This document shows, in pieces, positions 25,087 through 52,251 of a DNA stretch of 64,000 nt. The stretch lies in IMG/VR virus record IMGVR_UViG_3300040801_002079, positions 186,001-250,000 of that record; one strand, 5' to 3'. The position numbers and the translations under genes are program-made. Under the pieces are notes generated by a model that saw nothing but the letters and a program-made list of their open reading frames with translations, was not told the origin of the DNA and made no database searches. How positions within the stretch are numbered: position 1 is the first letter of the stretch; each line of letters starts with the position of its first letter.

Positions 25087-26274
25087 TTAATTTAGATCAG
25101 CTAATAAATCATCTTTTCCTAATGTAAAGCCAGATTCAGTCCATTTAGATTTAAGAGAATTTAATATTCGCCCAAGTTCTGGTCCCGGCGATATGCCTAA
25201 TCTCTTTAAATCTTCACCATTGACTGGAAAAGTAGGGGCATCCCAATTTTGAAACTTATTCGCAGCCCCATTTTTATTCTTATACACAAGCAGAGCGTGA
25301 ACAAGATTTTTCTTTATTCTCAGCATGATATGCATTTTCTTAGCTAGAGTTAAATTGATGTCCTTATCACGATGCTGTAATATGGTTTTCATCATTTCAT
25401 ATTCTGGGTTACTGAATTTCCACCGTGACCTTACATCATTCAACTCATCGACTGAACTTAATAACGATGCCATTAATAGGTTTGGGTCCTTTGTATTATT
25501 GTAAACTCGACTGAACTCCTTGAGGTTTGGATTGGGTAATCCAATATTATTCATAACCCCAGACTCTTTCATCTTGGACAATATTAAAGGGGCATGATTG
25601 CCTGAAAGGATTTTTGCCATTTCCATCCATATCCTTTCACCGCTTATTCTTTTCAAGCCTTCTGCATTTTTTGCAATCTTGGATAGGGTGTCCTTATCAA
25701 AGTTAGGAGACTCGGTTCGACCCTGAAATCTAAAATATCTAAGAATTCTTAAAAAATCTTCCTGCATTCTGGAATCAGCATCCCCAACAAATCTCGCTGT
25801 ACCAGATTTCAAATCCTCATGACCCCCATGATAATCATATAGATTACCATCAAAGTCCATGCTCATAGCGTTAAAAGTGAGGTCCCTTCTTTCCGCATCC
25901 TGTTCCCAATCTTTGGTATACTCAACTTCAGCATGTCTGCCATCAGTTTCAACATCTATGCGAAGCGTTGTTATTTCGTAATCCTCGCCATCAATGTGAG
26001 CAACCACTGTGCCGTGCTGTAGCCCCGTTTCAATCACTCTTATATCATTGGCCTTAAGTAACTCCATACTCTCGTTAGGAGTCGCATCTGTGGCTAAATC
26101 AATGTCCTTAGGCTCCTTATCCATAAGTATGTCACGCACAGCGCCACCAACAATTCGAAGTTCGTGTCCGTTTTGCTTATAAAGCTGATTAAGGCGTAAC
26201 AAATTCTTATCCAACAATCTGTTAAGAGTTTGCTTCTTATTTGTTACTTGCTCTAAGAGAATACTAAGTTTCAT
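25087..26274 (-). CDS. cca: CCA-adding tRNA nucleotidyltransferase
   Basis: VGGAVRD, DIDLAT, EITTLR, RRDLTFNA, EDFLRILR, ISGERI. Confidence 0.93.
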   Translation of the reverse strand: MKLSILLEQVTNKKQTLNRLLDKNLLRLNQLYKQNGHELRIVGGAVRDILMDKEPKDIDLATDATPNESMELLKANDIRVIETGLQHGTVVAHIDGEDYEITTLRIDVETDGRHAEVEYTKDWEQDAERRDLTFNAMSMDFDGNLYDYHGGHEDLKSGTARFVGDADSRMQEDFLRILRYFRFQGRTESPNFDKDTLSKIAKNAEGLKRISGERIWMEMAKILSGNHAPLILSKMKESGVMNNIGLPNPNLKEFSRVYNNTKDPNLLMASLLSSVDELNDVRSRWKFSNPEYEMMKTILQHRDKDINLTLAKKMHIMLRIKKNLVHALLVYKNKNGAANKFQNWDAPTFPVNGEDLKRLGISPGPELGRILNSLKSKWTESGFTLGKDDLLADLN

Positions 26275-30735: not shown

Positions 30736-31845
30736 ATGAAATTATATTTTTACAATACACTACTGAACATTATGAAAATGTTTATCCAATGTGATAGACC
30801 ACTAAGCCATAAGAACTATAAAAAGATATACAAAAAGAAACTATACTTTGAATTAAAGCAAAAACATGATTTTAAAGAATTTGATTTATGGTTTAATCGT
30901 ACATGGAAGTATGCGATTTTAGACAATACCAATAGTGACACATTTGTTGGCTCAGTTATAGAATCTACTATCCTATTAATGAAGCAGTTTAGCCTCAGAC
31001 ATGTGTGTGGAATTCAACCACTTAACGGTCCAGTTGGGTCGGCATATACACTATCAATTACCCGCAATGACACCAATCCATCCAAAATGTGTTTAGAAGT
31101 CATAGCAAACAGTGTACAAGCGGAAGCCAAGCGGCTGAATACCCAATATACCCTTGAGGCTGCACAGGATTTAAAGACGCATCATAATATTGATTTACAT
31201 CAAGACTTGAATGAGATGATATCTCAATCCATTGACGCAGAATTTATGGAAGAATTTATATCCGAAGTAAAAGAAAAGTCCCCCATTAAAGAAACTTTCA
31301 CTATGGACACCATAAATGCAAATACCATGGAACTGCTGCACGGTCAAATTAATATCATAGCTAGTAAAATTGCAATGATAACACGCCGGGGTGCGGGCAA
31401 TGTCATCTTCACATCCCCCTATATTGCTGCCCTACTTGAAGAATATGGACACATCAAACCGAATAGTTATAATTCAGACCTAGATAGTTTAAACCTTCGA
31501 CACGTTGGGCTTCTCAACCAGAAAAGAGACATTCAGGTATATTCATATAATGGTGCAGAACCTGAATTTCTAATGATGGGATATAAGGGGTTGAACGAAA
31601 CCGATGCGGGTCTAATTTTCTGCCCGTATATACCAATACTGTCCACTGGAGTTGTTATGGATAAGGAAACGTTTAACCCCACTGTTACATTTATGACTCG
31701 CTATGGAAGGCAGGCAGTTAATGATACCACCGAATCATGGGAAATGGAAAACAACAATCGCTTCATCTATTATGGTATATTGGATTTGAAATTACCGGAA
31801 GCATATGAGGGTGACGCTCAGTTACTGATGGAAAACGCTGCATAA
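30736..31845 (+). CDS. second, divergent gp23-family capsid protein
   Basis: CGIQPLNGPVG, YTLEAAQDL, TRRGAGN, FCPYIP, FMTRYG; own sigma70 promoter TTGACT-N17-TACACT. Confidence 0.85.
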   Translation: MKLYFYNTLLNIMKMFIQCDRPLSHKNYKKIYKKKLYFELKQKHDFKEFDLWFNRTWKYAILDNTNSDTFVGSVIESTILLMKQFSLRHVCGIQPLNGPVGSAYTLSITRNDTNPSKMCLEVIANSVQAEAKRLNTQYTLEAAQDLKTHHNIDLHQDLNEMISQSIDAEFMEEFISEVKEKSPIKETFTMDTINANTMELLHGQINIIASKIAMITRRGAGNVIFTSPYIAALLEEYGHIKPNSYNSDLDSLNLRHVGLLNQKRDIQVYSYNGAEPEFLMMGYKGLNETDAGLIFCPYIPILSTGVVMDKETFNPTVTFMTRYGRQAVNDTTESWEMENNNRFIYYGILDLKLPEAYEGDAQLLMENAA

Positions 31846-38396: not shown

Positions 38397-39869
38397 CTAT
38401 TTAAAATCATGAAAGAGCCACCAGTTAATCTTTTTGCCTGTTCTTATGGTGAACACCTTGGCAACATGTCTAGCCCCGAACGCCATAGCAAACAATAACG
38501 CCAATAGAATACCAAACCATGTATGTTGCACAAAGGCAAAATATAAAAAGTTTTCAAAAGTCGATGGGACGAGTGTCATAAACCCATTATATAAGCGAGA
38601 ATTAACACTTGGATCAAATTCAGAAGAACTGAAATACCAAACCAATATTGCAGTAAATAGAGTCAATTCCGTTATGACATGATATAGCACAGTTCGAATC
38701 ATATGCAACATGTTAATTCTGGATTTCAGTTTTTTAACATCATCAACGCCCACTTCGTACACGATAGGTGGTTGATCTTGTTTTGTTCCAACAATTTCAA
38801 ATTTATTGGGAAACACTGGTGCATATCTTCTTAATGAAATTCGTTCAAACACAGAGTCATGTATTTTTATATTACCCTCAACCATCGTCTCAGATATATC
38901 CCGTATATGACGAGGAGAATATCTATAATATCCCATTATCCCACGCCGTGAATCTGGTAGTGAGCCACCGGGGTTCATTCCATCTTTAACATCTGACCAT
39001 AAATTAGGGTTAAATATCACCCCATGAGATGCTGCCCTTTCCATCATCCAGTCTAGTGTAATCATTGATAAGCCTGTACGCTCTAATCCGCCTCCCACAT
39101 TACTGTGTCCTCCTGCAAACCAGACTTGTTCAATGTGTTGAGGACGTTCTGTATCATTTTCATTCCATAGGTTAGGATGAAAAGACTTTCTTTCATCATC
39201 TATAGCTAATGCATGATATGCGTGTTTTACATTTTTATCCAATTGAAATTCATAGTATCGATGAGGGAAAAATACATTTGTTATTTTATCTATGAGCATT
39301 GATAAGCCGATCACAAGCCAAGAAGAGTCTTTAGGGAATCCCAGTGCTTCAACTGTGTCCCATGCACCAATCATTTCAATGTCCACACTTCCGTGGGTTT
39401 TCCTAGCTTTAAAATCTTCTAGTTCGTCTTTGTACTTTTCAGAACGTTTATATAGACGCAAAGCTTTTAAACACTCAATTGTAAATTTAATTCTATCCAA
39501 TCTACCGCTCGTGGTTACAACTTTAGAATCTTTCTTTAAAAGACCAACCCTCTGTATCATACCGACTGCTGCCCTAACTGTAGCGGCTCCGCGACTGAAC
39601 CCGAAGAAAAATATTTTATCTCCCGGTTCATAATGCCTAGCTAGATATCCATAAAGATTTAATACATTTTTTTGAAAACCGAAGCCAAATGCTCCAGACA
39701 GTAAACGCATAAAACCTAAGCCCTTTGAGCCTATACCATCATCATAGTATGCAATCTGGGTTGTATTCTGTGTATCTACAGCCTTATAAAGCTGAAACAC
39801 ATTGGTGTTGAGTATTGCTCCGCCAGCCTTACCTGTACCATCTGAGCATAAAATAATATTCTTGGACAT
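38397..39869 (-). CDS. DUF2235/Tle1-like alpha/beta hydrolase with C-terminal TM helices
   Basis: LCSDGT, GFSRGAA, WDTV, HALAIDDER, QVWFAGGHSNVGGG. Confidence 0.9.
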   Translation of the reverse strand: MSKNIILCSDGTGKAGGAILNTNVFQLYKAVDTQNTTQIAYYDDGIGSKGLGFMRLLSGAFGFGFQKNVLNLYGYLARHYEPGDKIFFFGFSRGAATVRAAVGMIQRVGLLKKDSKVVTTSGRLDRIKFTIECLKALRLYKRSEKYKDELEDFKARKTHGSVDIEMIGAWDTVEALGFPKDSSWLVIGLSMLIDKITNVFFPHRYYEFQLDKNVKHAYHALAIDDERKSFHPNLWNENDTERPQHIEQVWFAGGHSNVGGGLERTGLSMITLDWMMERAASHGVIFNPNLWSDVKDGMNPGGSLPDSRRGIMGYYRYSPRHIRDISETMVEGNIKIHDSVFERISLRRYAPVFPNKFEIVGTKQDQPPIVYEVGVDDVKKLKSRINMLHMIRTVLYHVITELTLFTAILVWYFSSSEFDPSVNSRLYNGFMTLVPSTFENFLYFAFVQHTWFGILLALLFAMAFGARHVAKVFTIRTGKKINWWLFHDFK

Positions 39870-40308: not shown

Positions 40309-40701
40309 TTATAACAATTCGAGATTACCTGTATACTTATCCAGTATCTCAGGGTCTGCTGGGCCAACCGCTAGACATGTATAGGTTGGCTCTTTGAATT
40401 CGGTTCTACCTTCGTCCTGAATTAAAGCGTGATGTTCAAGACCCCTGACATCCCTAATTTCTTCATAAAGATCAAGTAACTCTCTTTCAGAATCAACACT
40501 AACGCAAATCTTAGTGAACTTACCGTTTAACCATGCATTCATCTGAGGAGTTAAAGGAATAACCCTATGTCCTCTTTCACCATAATTGGAAAGGTTAATG
40601 GAGTCTTTTAAAATAGCACCCATTGATGCGTGTGCACCTTGCGCAACCATTTTACCCTTACGCATGTTTAAATCTTTGCGCATTACAATTACTTGTTTCA
40701 T
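40309..40701 (-). CDS. peptidyl-tRNA hydrolase, Pth2 family
   Basis: KQVIVMRKDLNMRKGKMVAQGAHA, IQDEGRTEF, TCLAVGP. Confidence 0.92.
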   Translation of the reverse strand: MKQVIVMRKDLNMRKGKMVAQGAHASMGAILKDSINLSNYGERGHRVIPLTPQMNAWLNGKFTKICVSVDSERELLDLYEEIRDVRGLEHHALIQDEGRTEFKEPTYTCLAVGPADPEILDKYTGNLELL

Positions 40702-45176: not shown

Positions 45177-45238
45177 TGGTGGAACTGACCGGACTCGAAC
45201 CGGCAACTTCGCGCACTCTACCGTTGAGCTACAGTCCC
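45177..45238 (-). ncRNA. anticodon-arm-less tRNA-Ala-like RNA
   Basis: acceptor with G3:U70 and A73-CCA, D arm, T arm; only 10 nt between D and T arms. Confidence 0.8.
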
Positions 45239-46100: not shown

Positions 46101-46188
46101 TCTTATAAATTTACCGGTTAATTTCGGTCCTCTGCGTTTAGCTGTGTCATGGCATCCTCCTATGCATTGGTGACATATATTGATAATT

Positions 46189-46266
46189 TGGAGCCGTCAC
46201 TGTGGAATCAAACCCAGTTGGTCGGACTTACGAGGCCCGTGCATCAATCGGCAATGCTTTGACGGC
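46189..46266 (-). tRNA. tRNA-Thr(CGT), divergent
   Basis: loop CTCGTAA; T loop TTTGATT with bulged T stem. Confidence 0.7.
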
Positions 46267-46268
46267 AT

Positions 46269-46513
46269 AAAAAAATGGCTGCTCCCGTAAGAACAGCCAT
46301 TCGATAATAAAGAAAGGTAAACCTCCCACCACAACATAGGGAGCCTTTTGTGGAAATTCTCAGCGCCTCCACCTGTGAGCAAAGCTCTTAGGGTTCGTCC
46401 TTGAGACTCAGGCCGTTCGCTAAAACGTTTTAACCTATGTGCCCATAGGTTCCATCATCTTGCGACATTTACCTTTCAAACACAATACTACACTACATAG
46501 TATTGAATGTCAA
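46269..46513 (-). ncRNA. promoter + structured RNA + terminator unit
   Basis: TTGACA-N17-TAGTAT; closing stem AAAGGTAAA/TTTACCTTT; terminator GGCTGTTC..GAGCAGCC-A-T7. Confidence 0.6.
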
Positions 46514-46599: not shown

Positions 46600-46675
46600 T
46601 GGCAGGCGAGGAGGGCCTCGAACCCCCAACCTGCGGTTTTGGAGACCGCTGCTCTTCCAATTAAGCTACTCGCCT
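46600..46675 (-). tRNA. tRNA-Trp(CCA)
   Basis: loop CTCCAAA, CCA. Confidence 0.95.
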
Positions 46676-47283
46676 ATTTTCTTACAATTCTCAAAATGCC
46701 ACCTAGTCATTCCATTTTGTACACCACGCAATCCACAATGGGGGCAAGTTACATATATCTTTTCTTTCAACTTTAATGATTCGCTAATTTTATTTATATG
46801 TTCTAGTGTTTTTGGTTTCGAAGCAGCTTTTGATGCATGGGACTTTTGTGCTAAAGGGTCGCGCCTAGACCAGTGATTCTTCGACATTAGGTGGCGAGTT
46901 TTATCTGATACTGGTGGTCGCTTTAACGCTGCTTGCCGAATCTTATTCTTTGTTTCAAAATTATGGGATTTACCACTAAATGCACCAATAATTCCGGGAT
47001 TACCTCCACTTCCGCCAACTTTTAAATTATAACATAACGGGCTATTAACTACCGATTCATTAACCAAGCTTCGCTCAATATAAAACATCTCTTCCTTAGT
47101 ATCAACCACGGCTAAAATTTCTTTCTCAAAATTCTCAATTCCATATTTTTTAATGGCTCGTTTCAAAACCTTGCCCGAACCCATATACCCATCATTTAAA
47201 TCAACGGTCTTATGGCAACCTATATAAAACCTACCGTTGATTTTATTTGTTATCTTATAAACAATGTATTTAATGTCTATCAT
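46666..47283 (-). mobile_element. GIY-YIG (Seg-like) homing endonuclease with NUMOD3-like repeats
   Basis: [17 protein letters not shown]; N-terminus near-identical to 33906-34685; TATAAATA upstream. Confidence 0.85.
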
Positions 47284-47304
47284 GTATGTATTTATACTAA
47301 TATT

Positions 47305-47356
47305 TGGTGGGGAAGCCAGAACGAGCCGTTGGCCCGCGTGTGTACACACCCTCCCC
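47305..47356 (-). ncRNA. 52-nt mini RNA with acceptor-like stem and ACCA
   Basis: GGGGAGG...CTTCCCC-ACCA. Confidence 0.6.
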
Positions 47357-47362
47357 ATTGTT

Positions 47363-47452
47363 TGGTACTCTGGGTCGGACTCGAACCGACACGGGCACAC
47401 ACGGCCCACTGGATTTTAAATCCAGCGCGACTACCAATTTCGCCACCAGAGC
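47363..47452 (-). tRNA. tRNA-Leu(TAA)
   Basis: loop TTTAAAA, long V-arm. Confidence 0.93.
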
Positions 47453-47461
47453 ATTCTTGTT

Positions 47462-47515
47462 TGGTGGAGAGTGAGTTGAGTCCATGAAACCCAACGCTGA
47501 TCAGACTTCCTCTCC
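47462..47515 (-). ncRNA. 54-nt mini RNA with acceptor-like stem and ACCA
   Basis: GGAGAG...CTCTCC-ACCA. Confidence 0.6.
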
Positions 47516-47521
47516 ATTGTT

Positions 47522-47596
47522 TGGTGTTACCGACGAGATTCGAACTCGCACCGTCCAGAGTGAAAGTCTGGTGACCTACCATTAGTCTACGGTAAC
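47522..47596 (-). tRNA. tRNA-Glu(TTC)
   Basis: loop CTTTCAC, CCA. Confidence 0.92.
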
Positions 47597-47774
47597 ATGT
47601 TAATTTTAGGGTTAACCGGCATTCAGTGCAGTCTTAGACAAACCACCTGAGGTCGGGATGGTAAAAACCCTCTCAAAAATTTAACCCATCTTTATTACGT
47701 TTCACCCCTCGCGCACACAATAGAAGCTACCTATTGCGGTCTACTGCGCTACTCGGTCAGTCGTAATTCTAATT

Positions 47775-47864
47775 TGGTACGATGGGTCGGACTCGAACCG
47801 ACACGGGCACACACGGCCCACTGGCTTCTAAAGCCAGCGCGACTACCAATTTCGCCACCATCGC
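47775..47864 (-). tRNA. tRNA-Leu(TAG)
   Basis: loop TTTAGAA; paralog of Leu(TAA). Confidence 0.93.
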
Positions 47865-47870
47865 ATAATT

Positions 47871-47946
47871 ATCAAAGCGTTTTTGCCACTTAAACTACTG
47901 TCCCGGTGCCGGGATCAGGTGGGTTTCGAACCCACATCTCCTTGAT
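47871..47946 (-). ncRNA. circularly permuted tRNA-like RNA
   Basis: order T arm, loop-closed acceptor stem, D arm; ends pair. Confidence 0.7.
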
Positions 47947-47957
47947 CATATATTGTT

Positions 47958-48033: not shown

Positions 48034-48149
48034 ATAAATTTGGTGTGGGATACTTAACGCCCAGCATCGCTCCCACGACAACCCCTGCAATAGAATATCT
48101 CCGCTTGCGGCACCATCTATTACATCTAAGGCGGGTTACTTAAGTAAGG

Positions 48150-50534: not shown

Positions 50535-51107
50535 TTAAACCATGCATCCTATCAGTAAATTAAGAGTCTTATCGTAATCATCTTGTTTCTTCTGATATTC
50601 TTCGTTTCTACCCAATATATCTATCGCTCGTTTCATTGAGTAATAATTTAGCCCATTATGAAAGTCAGTTTGAACAAAATGCTCGTGATGTTCCTCATTG
50701 AACAAATGCTGTTCCATGTCATCAATAATGACATAAGCCTCTATATCATCACGCTTTTCCAGCCATTCCGATATGCGGTGAGTGCGTCCATATAATTCGC
50801 GATCACCAGAAAGACTGAAGCCTGAGCTTTCAGTTCTTCCAACAAACACCGTTCGAGGGAAAGTAAACCCCCGTTCTACAAACATATCATAAAGCTCTTT
50901 AATGGAAAAAAGCTCTCTCCATGTACTGGAAACCACAATCTTGGCATCAGTTTGTTTAAGTATCTCCTCAAGAAGGGCTAACTTTCCCGGAGAAATGACC
51001 TCTGCTCCATGGTTATAAGGATGATCTTCAACATAATCCTTTTCCATAAAATCGGTGGTTGAGTTTAAAACTCCATCAATATCTAAAAAAATAACTTTCA
51101 TAGTCAT
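50535..51107 (-). CDS. HAD phosphatase (Swiss-army-knife RNA-repair type)
   Basis: FLDIDGVLN, VVSSTWR, YVIIDD. Confidence 0.85.
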   Translation of the reverse strand: MTMKVIFLDIDGVLNSTTDFMEKDYVEDHPYNHGAEVISPGKLALLEEILKQTDAKIVVSSTWRELFSIKELYDMFVERGFTFPRTVFVGRTESSGFSLSGDRELYGRTHRISEWLEKRDDIEAYVIIDDMEQHLFNEEHHEHFVQTDFHNGLNYYSMKRAIDILGRNEEYQKKQDDYDKTLNLLIGCMV

Positions 51108-51219: not shown

Positions 51220-51292
51220 ACACCCCGACAGGAGTCGAACCTGCAACCGAGAGCTACTATGCCCCCAACTCTGCCGTTGAGTTTACGGAGTA
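51220..51292 (-). pseudogene. tRNA-like element with aberrant anticodon loop, no CCA
   Basis: acceptor TACTCCG/CGGGGTG, D and T arms, 6- or 8-nt loop around ATAGTA. Confidence 0.6.
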
Positions 51293-51301
51293 TTTCTAAT
51301 T

Positions 51302-51425
51302 TGGTATGGTCAGCGGGAGCCAAACCTTGAACGTGGTTCCGGACCTTCTGTTCATTTTTCGCAGCCTCTGCCTTCGCAATTCCGGAATGCTACTAACAGC
51401 CGTTTTATCATTAAACTATGACCAT
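51302..51425 (-). ncRNA. 124-nt tRNA-derived RNA ending ACCA
   Basis: ATGGTCA/TGACCAT acceptor, D arm, expanded interior. Confidence 0.6.
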
Positions 51426-52097: not shown

Positions 52098-52100
52098 ATA

Positions 52101-52195
52101 TGTCCATATTTTGATCCAACACTTTTTCAGAAGGACCGCGCTACCAGTTTAGCTACCAGCTTTCGCTGAACAGGACTCGAACCTGCATATGGACA
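52101..52195 (-). ncRNA. circularly permuted tRNA-like (YrlA-like) RNA
   Basis: terminal stem TGTCCATAT/ATATGGACA enclosing T arm, GAAA-closed acceptor, D arm. Confidence 0.7.
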
Positions 52196-52251
52196 CAGTG
52201 TTTCTCATTCTATACAATTCACGTTTTTTGTATATTATGAGAAACAGAAAA

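What the first reader, a model, noticed from the sequence alone, without database searches (positions are those of the whole stretch)
47305..47515. Two ~53-nt CCA-ended mini RNAs with a common architecture
Seen: 47356-47305 GGGGAGG-GTGTGTACACAC-GCGGGCCAACGGCTCGT-TCTGG-CTTCCCC-ACCA and 47515-47462 GGAGAG-GAAGT-CTGATCAG-C-GTTGGGTTTCATGGACTCAAC-TCA-CTCTCC-ACCA. Each has an acceptor-like stem, a self-complementary palindrome, a hairpin and ACCA. Each lies 6 nt (AACAAT) downstream of a tRNA's CCA, like an ordinary member of the array. Inference: processed like tRNAs, possibly dimerising through the palindrome or acting as decoys.
Basis: partly seen in the sequence, partly recalled or inferred. Interest (0 to 1): 0.65.

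Follow-up and report, generated by a model that had tools for sequence, protein, structure and literature searches.

The report
Conserved CCA-ended mini-RNAs beside phage tRNAs
Two genes of about 53 bases, wedged between tRNA genes of a giant phage, have tRNA-style ends but a different body. One of them is kept in two related phages with mutations that compensate each other across a stem, so it is a real small RNA of an undescribed family whose job is still unknown.

Summary
Both elements start 6 nt (AACAAT) after a tRNA's CCA, close with a 6-7 bp acceptor-like stem and end in ACCA. At a fixed start this happens by chance about 2-6 times in 10,000.

No tRNA finder, Rfam model or sequence search recognises them. 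Their folding energies are not unusual.

The decisive result is comparative. Two related phage contigs (L159, L158) carry mini2 at other positions of their tRNA arrays. In all three copies these parts are invariant:
- the acceptor stem;
- a 14-nt unpaired stretch holding the CUGAUCAG palindrome;
- the CAUGG core of the loop;
- the CCA.

The 7-bp hairpin stem keeps pairing through changes on both sides at 4 of 7 pairs. Length differences rule out coding. Mini2 is therefore a selected, structured RNA.

Mini1 has the same layout but no homologue anywhere. It may be a diverged second member or a relic.

The most likely mechanism is excision from the tRNA precursor by RNase P and 3' trimming, giving a stable CCA-ended RNA that acts through its invariant self-complementary motifs. 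The partner could be itself, a protein or another RNA. No expression data exist. Dimerisation and decoy roles remain possible but untested.

The parts
47462..47515 (-). mini2: 54-nt CCA-ended RNA gene, the conserved member of the family
   Evidence: Sequence. Homologues at L159:1620-1673 and L158:1205-1259. Covariation. The covariance model scores the three copies at 94, 93 and 75 bits.
47516..47521 (-). AACAAU leader of mini2, giving U(-1) and C(-4) before G(+1)
   Evidence: The leader is AACAAT in L159 and ATCAAT in L158. RNase P preferences are from PMC10731613.
47510..47515 (-). mini2 acceptor-like stem, 5' strand (GGAGAG)
   Evidence: Pairs with 47466-47471. All six pairs are invariant in the three copies.
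47495..47508 (-). mini2 invariant unpaired 14 nt (AAGUCUGAUCAGCG), with the palindrome CUGAUCAG at 47497-47504
   Evidence: 100% identical in the window, L159 and L158. Unpaired in the minimum-energy fold and in the RNAalifold consensus. Self-duplex energy -12.2 kcal/mol.
47475..47495 (-). mini2 7-bp hairpin with a 7-nt loop (loop at 47482-47488: UUCAUGG, or UCCAUGG in L158)
   Evidence: 4 of 7 stem pairs changed on both sides with pairing kept. Loop core CAUGG is invariant.
47462..47471 (-). mini2 acceptor 3' strand (CUCUCC) plus discriminator and CCA
   Evidence: The discriminator is A in the window and L159, and G in L158.
47305..47356 (-). mini1: 52-nt CCA-ended element of the same layout, with no homologue found
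   Evidence: The mini2 model matches it only through its ends (24 bits, E about 1e-3). No match in any collection.
47357..47362 (-). AACAAU leader of mini1
47338..47349 (-). mini1 12-nt perfect palindrome (GUGUGUACACAC), which can be a 4-bp hairpin or a 12-bp self-duplex
   Evidence: self-duplex -22 kcal/mol.
47321..47337 (-). mini1 7-bp hairpin with a 3-nt loop
47522..47596 (-). tRNA-Glu(UUC), immediately upstream of mini2
47363..47452 (-). tRNA-Leu(UAA), between mini2 and mini1
46666..47283 (-). GIY-YIG homing endonuclease gene, starting 21 nt after mini1
   Evidence: Pfam. Its homologues in other phages carry no mini-RNA upstream.

Best explanation
Mini2 is a gene for a small structured RNA of an undescribed family. 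The family is confined, as far as can be seen, to a narrow clade of jumbo T4-superfamily phages.

It is built from two modules.

(1) tRNA-type ends: an AACAAU leader, G1, a 6-7 bp acceptor-like stem, a discriminator and an encoded CCA. These place it in the processing register of the polycistronic tRNA array. I infer that RNase P cuts its 5' end and that 3' exonucleases trim back to the CCA. This would release a stable RNA of about 54 nt and would also finish the neighbouring tRNAs.

(2) A non-tRNA body: an invariant 14-nt unpaired stretch carrying the palindrome CUGAUCAG, and a 7-bp hairpin. The hairpin stem is free to change as long as it pairs. Its loop core (CAUGG) is invariant and self-complementary. 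I infer that these invariant unpaired motifs are the working surface. They would bind a partner sequence-specifically: a second copy (homodimer), a protein or another RNA.

Mini1 is a second element with the same layout, specific to this phage, with a different palindrome and body. It is either a fast-diverged paralogue or a recent derivative.

Shown: the anatomy, the register, and the conservation and covariation of mini2.
Inferred: transcription, processing and stability.
Unknown: the partner and the biological role.
For: Anatomy and register.

Ends beyond chance.

RNase P determinants that are present (U(-1), C(-4), G(+1), RCCA) and precedents for non-tRNA substrates in which a helix replaces the T loop (C4 RNA of P1/P7, 4.5S/SRP RNA): PMC10731613 and PMC2190699.

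Conservation: mini2 homologues sit in L159 (anchor protein 75% identical) and L158 (86%) at different array positions. They follow tRNA-Leu(UAG) and a 77-nt tRNA-Leu(UAA), instead of tRNA-Glu as in the window.

Alignment A4: the acceptor stem, the 14-nt stretch, the CAUGG core of the loop and the CCA are invariant (loop position 2 is U, U or C). In the hairpin, 4 of 7 pairs changed on both sides and 97% of cells are paired, against 36-58% when the partners are slid. RNAalifold finds the same structure independently.

Lengths of 54, 54 and 55 nt, with indels, exclude a coding reading.

The same array encodes a CCA-adding enzyme, a PTH2 peptidyl-tRNA hydrolase and an RNA-repair HAD domain, so the phage invests in tRNA ends.
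Against: There is no RNA evidence at all. No RNA run holds the sequence.

Only three homologues exist, all from closely related phages (effective sequence number 1.86). The shuffle control was reached in 12 of 500 trials.

Mini1 has no homologue.

Folding energies are unremarkable.

The elements lack a T loop, so the RNase P specificity-domain contact is missing and cleavage could be slow. U(-1) can pair with A73, and leader-RCCA pairing is a known anti-determinant.

No antisense target above chance was found in the window.

The array also holds obvious tRNA debris, so not everything CCA-ended here needs a function.
Confidence: 0.6

Rival explanations
1. They are tRNA-gene relics: class II tRNA genes whose interior was deleted or replaced. 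They persist only because intact ends keep the array processable, and the released RNAs do nothing.
For: The same array holds clear relics: a tRNA-Ala without an anticodon arm at 45177-45238 and a 3' fragment of a tRNA-Gln at 47900-47951. Mini1 is an orphan. The ends of mini2 resemble class II tRNA ends. The tRNA-Tyr that follows tRNA-Glu in Vibrio phage V07 ranks first of 270 tRNAs. The last 12 nt of the L158 copy equal those of a tRNA-Ser in L094.
Against: Neutral relics would not keep a 14-nt unpaired stretch and the CAUGG core of a loop invariant while the stem between them changes at 4 of 7 pairs with compensation. Neither element shows any D-, anticodon- or T-arm remnant. Mini2 keeps its identity while its neighbours differ in three phages.
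Confidence: 0.15
2. They are processing punctuation only: minimal RNase P substrates that release the upstream tRNA's 3' trailer and separate the array from the downstream homing-endonuclease mRNA.
For: Mini1 lies between the last tRNA of a run and the endonuclease start codon 21 nt further on. RNase P is known to separate polycistronic tRNA transcripts without RNase E (PMC2190699).
Against: Mini2 sits between two tRNAs, where the next tRNA already supplies an RNase P site. Punctuation needs only the ends, not an invariant 14-nt stretch and loop. Endonuclease homologues in other arrays have no such element.
Confidence: 0.1
3. They are decoys for a host factor that acts on tRNA acceptor ends. 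An example is the abortive-infection nucleotidyltransferase toxins of the MenT/AbiEii type, which extend CCA ends and prefer class II tRNA-Ser through its long variable arm. The mini-RNA offers a CCA end next to a long side hairpin at low cost.
For: Mini2 combines a tRNA-Ser/Tyr-like acceptor stem, a CCA and a 7-bp side hairpin whose length is kept but whose sequence is not. MenT3 needs the CCA end and the long variable arm (PMC11162799). The phage carries its own CCA-adding enzyme.
Against: This is purely an analogy: no host, no toxin and no assay. MenT3 also needs the acceptor-T stem length and the D/T core, which are absent here. The invariant unpaired motifs are not explained by this model.
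Confidence: 0.12
4. They are aminoacylated, non-decoding mini-acceptors, charged by a host synthetase that reads only the acceptor stem and a side arm (for example SerRS).
For: The acceptor stem GGAGAG/CUCUCC, with G73 in L158, matches a phage tRNA-Ser. The hairpin length is conserved.
Against: The discriminator differs among copies (A, A, G), which is odd for one identity set. There is no T arm for EF-Tu. Nothing was tested.
Confidence: 0.05
5. It is a DNA-level feature: the palindromes are protein-binding or endonuclease sites and the RNA reading is incidental.
For: The palindromes contain TGATCA/GATC and TGTACA/GTAC cores. A homing endonuclease gene is adjacent.
Against: It does not explain the exact tRNA register, the terminal stem plus CCA, or the compensatory changes in a stem away from the palindrome. 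Palindromes are at chance density in the window.
Confidence: 0.04

Closest known systems
Phage T4 small stable RNAs C and D (species 1 and 2; rnaC, rnaD)
   Same: They are non-tRNA genes inside a phage tRNA cluster, next to a GIY-YIG homing endonuclease (segB), separated from their neighbours by a 6-nt A/T-rich spacer or a single base, and carrying tRNA-like 3' features. The annotated rnaD ends in CACC with the next base A, so CACCA is encoded, followed by AATTAT. rnaC ends with a T arm. Their roles have stayed unknown for decades (PMC3014915).
   Different: They are 139 and 119 nt against 52-54 nt. I saw no resemblance to the mini-RNAs by eye; no alignment was run. rnaC has a true T arm and no encoded CCA. 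rnaD shows no clean acceptor stem in its fold. The mini-RNAs have a perfect acceptor stem and no T arm.
C4 antisense RNA of phages P1/P7
   Same: It is a phage small RNA whose 5' end is made by RNase P. Its cleavage site matches the tRNA consensus (except C(-4)) and a helix replaces the T loop (PMC10731613; PMC2190699). It offers a working model: tRNA-like ends for maturation, unpaired loops for function.
   Different: No Rfam family matches either mini-RNA even at E <= 10. C4 is not in a tRNA array. No complementary target above chance was found in the window.
Canonical tRNA (Rfam RF00005)
   Same: A 7-bp acceptor stem, a discriminator, an encoded CCA, the same leader and spacer as neighbouring tRNAs, and membership of the array.
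   Different: No D, anticodon or T arm. Not detected by ARAGORN or by the Rfam model at E <= 10. No local similarity to 347 tRNAs above shuffled controls.
Armless or arm-lacking mitochondrial tRNAs of nematodes (e.g. Romanomermis culicivorax)
   Same: Similar size and plan: an acceptor stem, connectors and one central hairpin (PMC12221289, listed). The mini2 loop has 7 nt.
   Different: ARAGORN's metazoan-mitochondrial mode, which allows D- or TV-replacement loops, calls neither element. U33 is not conserved: it is C in L158. The mini1 loop has 3-5 nt. Bacterial EF-Tu and ribosomes are not adapted to such tRNAs (established knowledge).
Self-complementary dimerisation loops of RNAs (e.g. retroviral DIS); recalled from memory, offered as a lead only
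   Same: An invariant perfect palindrome exposed in an unpaired region, plus a second self-complementary loop.
   Different: No evidence of dimers. Predicted dimer gain is not outside the shuffle range.

Membership tests
tRNA (RF00005) | Cloverleaf with D arm, anticodon arm with a 7-nt loop, and T arm with the T-psi-C loop | tested here: not met
   No Rfam hit on 47290-47530 at E <= 10 except the true tRNA-Leu. ARAGORN calls neither element.
tRNA (RF00005) | 7-bp acceptor stem, discriminator, 3' CCA | tested here: met
   Mini1 has 7 bp (one G-U). Mini2 has 6 bp plus a G.A mismatch. Both end in A-CCA. These features are conserved in L158 and L159.
Arm-lacking mitochondrial-type tRNA | Acceptor stem plus an anticodon arm with U33 and purine 37, with replacement loops for the D and/or T arms | tested here: not met
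   ARAGORN -mt and -mtx give no call. Loop position 2 is U, U and C in the three mini2 copies.
tmRNA tRNA-like domain / alanine minihelix | G3:U70 pair, T arm, ACCA | tested here: not met
   Pair 3:70 is G:C in mini1 and A:U in mini2. No T arm. ARAGORN calls no tmRNA.
C4 antisense RNA and every other Rfam family | Match to the family covariance model | tested here: not met
Bacterial RNase P substrate (functional class) | U(-1)/G(+1) at the cut site, acceptor-type helix, 3' RCCA able to pair with loop L15 | tested here: met
   Sequence, judged against the criteria in PMC10731613.
Bacterial RNase P substrate (functional class) | Actual cleavage by RNase P | not testable with these tools
   Needs an in vitro assay or end-mapping in rnpA-deficient cells.
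T4 RNA C / RNA D type (tRNA-cluster stable RNAs) | Non-tRNA gene in register inside a phage tRNA cluster | tested here: met
   for the window; for T4.
T4 RNA C / RNA D type (tRNA-cluster stable RNAs) | Sequence or structure homology to rnaC or rnaD | not tested
   No alignment or search against rnaC or rnaD was run, and the GenBank phage search can miss weak similarity at this length. What is seen: sizes of 139 and 119 nt and different folds, and no resemblance by eye. This is an analogy of place, not a shown homology.
New mini2 family (defined here) | tRNA-type ends, invariant AAGUCUGAUCAGCG, covarying 7-bp hairpin with a CAUGG loop | tested here: met
   Three members score 75-94 bits. Mini1 matches only through its ends (24 bits), so its membership is inconclusive.

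The most novel reading that the evidence does not exclude
Mini1 and mini2 are armless, tRNA-derived RNAs that pair into homodimers through their exposed palindromes. Because the two palindromes differ, the two dimers would not cross-react. Each dimer would present two CCA ends. It would work as a sponge or decoy for a host factor that attacks or uses tRNA acceptor ends, such as abortive-infection nucleotidyltransferase toxins of the AbiEii/MenT kind. This would be a new class of RNA-based counter-defence carried inside phage tRNA arrays.
Probability: 0.12. Interest if true: 0.85.

Novelty: new variant of a known kind. Interest (0 to 1): 0.62.

Why it matters
Phage tRNA arrays are usually read as codon-usage or anti-defence supplies of ordinary tRNAs. 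The non-tRNA RNAs inside them (T4 RNA C and D) have been unexplained for fifty years.

This case is small and sharply defined: 54 nt, tRNA-type ends, and an invariant unpaired motif next to a covarying stem. That makes it easy to synthesise, mutate and assay.

It shows that selection keeps a non-decoding RNA in the processing register of a tRNA array. It also gives a tractable model for what such passengers do.

If the palindromes mediate dimerisation, or the CCA end serves as bait, this would add an RNA-only mechanism to the interplay of phages with host tRNA-directed defences.

Tried and rejected
- Nucleotide searches of GenBank phages with the region and with each mini-RNA found only tRNA matches or noise.
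- Exact and gapped pattern scans of IMG/VR for either element, for the shared ends and for the invariant mini2 motif found only the source contig plus chance hits in coding DNA. The same motif scan of GTDB genomes gave chance hits only.
- Anchoring on the neighbouring 113-aa and 158-aa proteins in IMG/VR and JGI metagenomes gave relatives too distant to carry the elements.
- Anchoring on the homing endonuclease showed that it moves independently and carries no mini-RNA elsewhere.
- XacN1, the closest named phage (capsid 64% identical), has no tRNA array at the syntenic place.
- A relative about 80% identical in an ENA assembly stops 24 nt after the 79-aa gene.
- Reads: there were only DNA contigs of the source sample. 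The 'variant' with two insertions is probably the L158-type copy, because the two insertions sit where L158 has its extra G and C in alignment A4; the contig itself was not compared with L158. The 412-nt skip joins the two near-identical Leu tRNAs and may be an assembly collapse.
- Antisense target search in the window found nothing above shuffled controls.
- Derivation of mini2 from the tRNA-Tyr that follows tRNA-Glu in Vibrio phages is suggested by the ends. It is weakened because mini2 follows Leu tRNAs in its relatives.
- Reading mini1 as an N-terminal extension of the endonuclease (an in-frame ATG lies inside AACAATG) was rejected. There is no ribosome-binding site, and the GIY-YIG domain already starts at residue 5 of the 205-aa protein that begins at the start codon used here.
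- It was replaced by simple duplex energies.

Full report
**Source and setting.** The window is part of IMGVR_UViG_3300040801_002079, a 316.8-kb viral contig from a microbial-mat metagenome. It encodes T4-type portal, capsid, terminase, gp32 and UvsX-like proteins. Its major capsid protein is 64% identical to that of the jumbo Xanthomonas phage XacN1. Between capsid and portal lies a 33-kb array with 37 ARAGORN tRNAs, all on the - strand and nearly all with an encoded CCA. The array is interspersed with small ORFs, GIY-YIG homing endonucleases, a CCA-adding enzyme, a PTH2 peptidyl-tRNA hydrolase and an RNA-repair-type HAD domain.

**The observation.**
- Mini1 (window:47305-47356:-, 52 nt) follows tRNA-Leu(UAA). 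Mini2 (window:47462-47515:-, 54 nt) follows tRNA-Glu. Each comes after the spacer AACAAT.
- Both begin with G, close with a 6-7 bp stem and end in A-CCA.
- RNAfold gives mini1 a three-way junction: the terminal stem, a 4-bp hairpin made from the 12-nt palindrome, and a 7-bp hairpin.
- RNAfold gives mini2 a terminal stem stacked on a 7-9 bp hairpin, with 12-14 unpaired bases on the 5' side that contain the 8-nt palindrome.

**Is it more than chance?**
- Energies are not exceptional (z about -1.4), and palindromes are at chance density in the window.
- The ends are not chance. At a fixed start, a 6-7 bp stem closed by NCCA within 40-70 nt occurs at 1.6e-4 to 6.6e-4 of positions.
- CCAAACAAT occurs four times on this strand. 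It is followed once by a tRNA, twice by the mini-RNAs and once by a tRNA-Gln 3' fragment.
- About 310 tRNA junctions in some 30 related arrays gave no further case.
- The region is identical in five separately assembled samples.

**What they are not.**
- ARAGORN does not call them, even in its mitochondrial mode that allows missing arms.
- No Rfam family matches at E <= 10.
- They have no local similarity to 347 tRNAs beyond shuffled controls.
- Nothing similar turned up in GenBank phages, IMG/VR or GTDB genomes.

**Comparative evidence.** Anchors close to the elements failed because the relatives they found were too distant, or the anchor was mobile. An 89-aa protein 1.2 kb downstream (window:45831-46100:-) did find closer relatives. 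Two short contigs proved informative.
- L159 comes from another JGI sample and its anchor protein is 75% identical. The region is syntenic there: the 113-aa and 79-aa genes, tRNA-Gln, the Leu tRNAs, then the 89-aa gene. A mini2 homologue lies at L159:1620-1673, directly after tRNA-Leu(UAG) plus AACAAT.
- L158 is a second, related phage in the source sample; its anchor protein is 86% identical. Its homologue lies at L158:1205-1259, after a 77-nt tRNA-Leu(UAA) plus ATCAAT.

In alignment A4 the following are identical in all three copies: the six acceptor pairs, the 14 unpaired bases AAGUCUGAUCAGCG, the loop core CAUGG and the CCA. The hairpin stem differs at most positions yet stays paired. Four of its seven pairs changed on both sides, one changed between G-U and G-C, and 97% of all cells are paired, against 36-58% when the 3' partners are slid by 1-3 columns. 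RNAalifold predicts the same structure without guidance.

The copies are 54, 54 and 55 nt long and differ by indels, which excludes a coding reading. A covariance model built from them (R1) finds only these three in 1.47 Mb of related loci. It also matches mini1, but only through its leader, stem and CCA (24 bits).

The 'variant with two insertions' seen in contigs of the source sample is probably the L158-type copy: its two insertions sit where L158 has an extra G and C in alignment A4.

Caveat: three sequences from one narrow clade make a small sample, and the shuffle control was reached in 12 of 500 trials.

**What the conservation pattern says.** Selection acts on the RNA fold, as the compensated stem shows. 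It also acts on the sequence of the unpaired parts, which is the signature of a surface that contacts something specific.
- Both unpaired parts are self-complementary. CUGAUCAG has a self-duplex energy of -12.2 kcal/mol.
- The loop with its closing bases forms an 8-bp self-duplex with two G.U pairs in the window. In L158 the U-to-C change turns those into G-C pairs (energy -7.2 against -13.0 kcal/mol).
It is not evidence for it. Whole-molecule cofolding puts the homodimer gain only at the 6th-7th percentile of shuffles, and the palindrome never varies, so covariation cannot test it.
- No antisense target above chance exists in the window.

**Likely mechanism.** The leader supplies U(-1) and C(-4), followed by G(+1), an acceptor-type helix and A/G73-CCA. 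Those are the determinants bacterial RNase P prefers. Known non-tRNA substrates such as phage C4 RNA and 4.5S RNA also lack a T loop. RNase P is also known to separate polycistronic tRNA transcripts by itself.

I therefore infer that the mini-RNAs are cut out of the array transcript like their neighbours and end at the encoded CCA next to a stable helix. No promoter or terminator of their own is evident. All of this is inference from sequence.

**Origin.** The ends of mini2 look like those of class II tRNAs.
- The tRNA-Tyr that follows tRNA-Glu in Vibrio phage V07 is the best of 270 tRNAs.
- The last 12 nt of the L158 copy equal those of a phage tRNA-Ser.
- tRNA-Ser genes with the same leader are the next-best hits of model R1.

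The array also contains undoubted tRNA derivatives. A tRNA-derived origin with loss of the D, anticodon and T arms and retention of a side hairpin is plausible but not shown.

Mini1 lies inside a window-specific insertion: tRNA-Leu(UAA), mini1, the endonuclease gene and tRNA-Trp. Its 5' strand differs from that of mini2 at one position, with the partner changed accordingly (G3:C70 against A3:U70). Its interior is unrelated.

**Comparison with known systems.** The nearest analogues by place are T4 RNA C and RNA D. They lie in the T4 tRNA cluster beside segB. The annotated rnaD ends in CACC with the next base A, followed by AATTAT, and rnaC ends with a T arm. Their roles are unknown. The nearest analogue by logic is C4 RNA of P1/P7. 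The mini-RNAs are members of neither. They fail the tRNA, armless-tRNA and tmRNA tests (see the membership table).

A concrete lead for the decoy idea is the MenT/AbiEii toxin family. These toxins extend CCA ends, and MenT3 selects tRNA-Ser through its long variable arm. This is analogy only.

**Verdict.** Mini2 is a real, selected small RNA of a new family with tRNA-type ends. Mini1 is a possible second member without comparative support. Processing is likely; function is open.

Noticed in passing
window 45177-45238 (-): A 62-nt tRNA-Ala-like gene with acceptor stem, D arm and T arm, a G3:U70 pair and ACCA, but with the anticodon arm deleted. It scores 47.6 bits against the Rfam tRNA model, with 13 central model positions missing. 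ARAGORN does not call it. By the known rules for AlaRS it could be charged with alanine yet could not decode.
   Followed up: partly
window 47900-47951 (-): After tRNA-Gln(UUG) plus AACAAT lies the 3' part of a second tRNA-Gln (anticodon-loop remnant, T arm, acceptor 3' strand), without a CCA. It is followed by an interrupted palindrome. This is a dead tRNA fragment.
   Followed up: partly
window 48041-48088 (-); L158:1316-1366; L159 about 1265-1314: A hairpin just upstream of tRNA-Gln(UUG) ends in ACCA in the window and in L158, and in AUCA in L159. It is conserved in all three phages with one compensatory pair (U-A against C-G). It may be another non-tRNA array RNA.
   Followed up: partly
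window 51302-51425 (-): A 124-nt element follows tRNA-Phe plus AAAACAAT. It has a perfect 7-bp terminal stem and ACCA. It has no Rfam match and its fold is not unusually stable.
   Followed up: partly
window 51220-51293 (-): A tRNA-like gene with D and T arms but an aberrant middle and no CCA. ARAGORN calls it 'tRNA-???'. Rfam aligns it to tRNA-Sec at only 17 bits, with the anticodon arm missing.
   Followed up: partly
window 46188-46268 (-): This stretch folds as a cloverleaf with a CGU (Thr) anticodon loop and a degenerate T arm, ending in UCCA. Both ARAGORN and Rfam miss it.
   Followed up: no
window 46270-46513 (-): A TTGACA-17-TAGTAT promoter-like site right after tRNA-Leu(CAA) and a strong intrinsic terminator at 46273-46302 bracket about 200 nt without a convincing ORF. 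This is a candidate small RNA.
   Followed up: no
window 52098-52251 (-); L158 about 1000-1110; L159 about 1680-1760: These elements have a T-arm-like hairpin ahead of a D-arm-like segment, enclosed by a long-range stem. They look like circularly permuted or scrambled tRNA pieces, and similar-looking pieces recur in the relatives (by eye only; no alignment was run).
   Followed up: no
window 47597-47774 (-); L158:780-950: A 178-nt non-coding stretch between tRNA-Leu(UAG) and tRNA-Glu folds well (z = -1.97). It is 90.6% identical in L158, where it sits at a different array position.
   Followed up: partly
window 38397-39869 (-), 40309-40701 (-), 50535-51107 (-), 25087-26274 (-), 30736-31845 (+): Genes embedded in the tRNA array: an intact protein with a Tle1-like phospholipase domain, a PTH2 peptidyl-tRNA hydrolase, a HAD domain of the 'Swiss Army Knife' RNA-repair type, a CCA-adding enzyme, and a second, shorter gp23-like capsid gene on the opposite strand.
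   Followed up: partly
L003:6303-6390; several places in L051: tRNA-like genes in which GGCAGUA replaces the usual T loop. They have plausible anticodon arms (GAU, UUU, CUU) and a CCA. ARAGORN calls none of them.
   Followed up: no
window 47370-47783: One contig of the source sample joins the two near-identical Leu tRNAs and skips 412 nt (most of tRNA-Leu(UAA), mini2, tRNA-Glu and the 178-nt element). It is either a real deletion variant or an assembly collapse across the repeat.
   Followed up: no
window 47283-47359 (-): The ATG inside AACAATG opens a frame that runs through mini1 without a stop and is in frame with the homing endonuclease. I judge this coincidental: there is no ribosome-binding site, and the GIY-YIG domain already starts at residue 5 of the protein that begins at the start codon used here.
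   Followed up: partly
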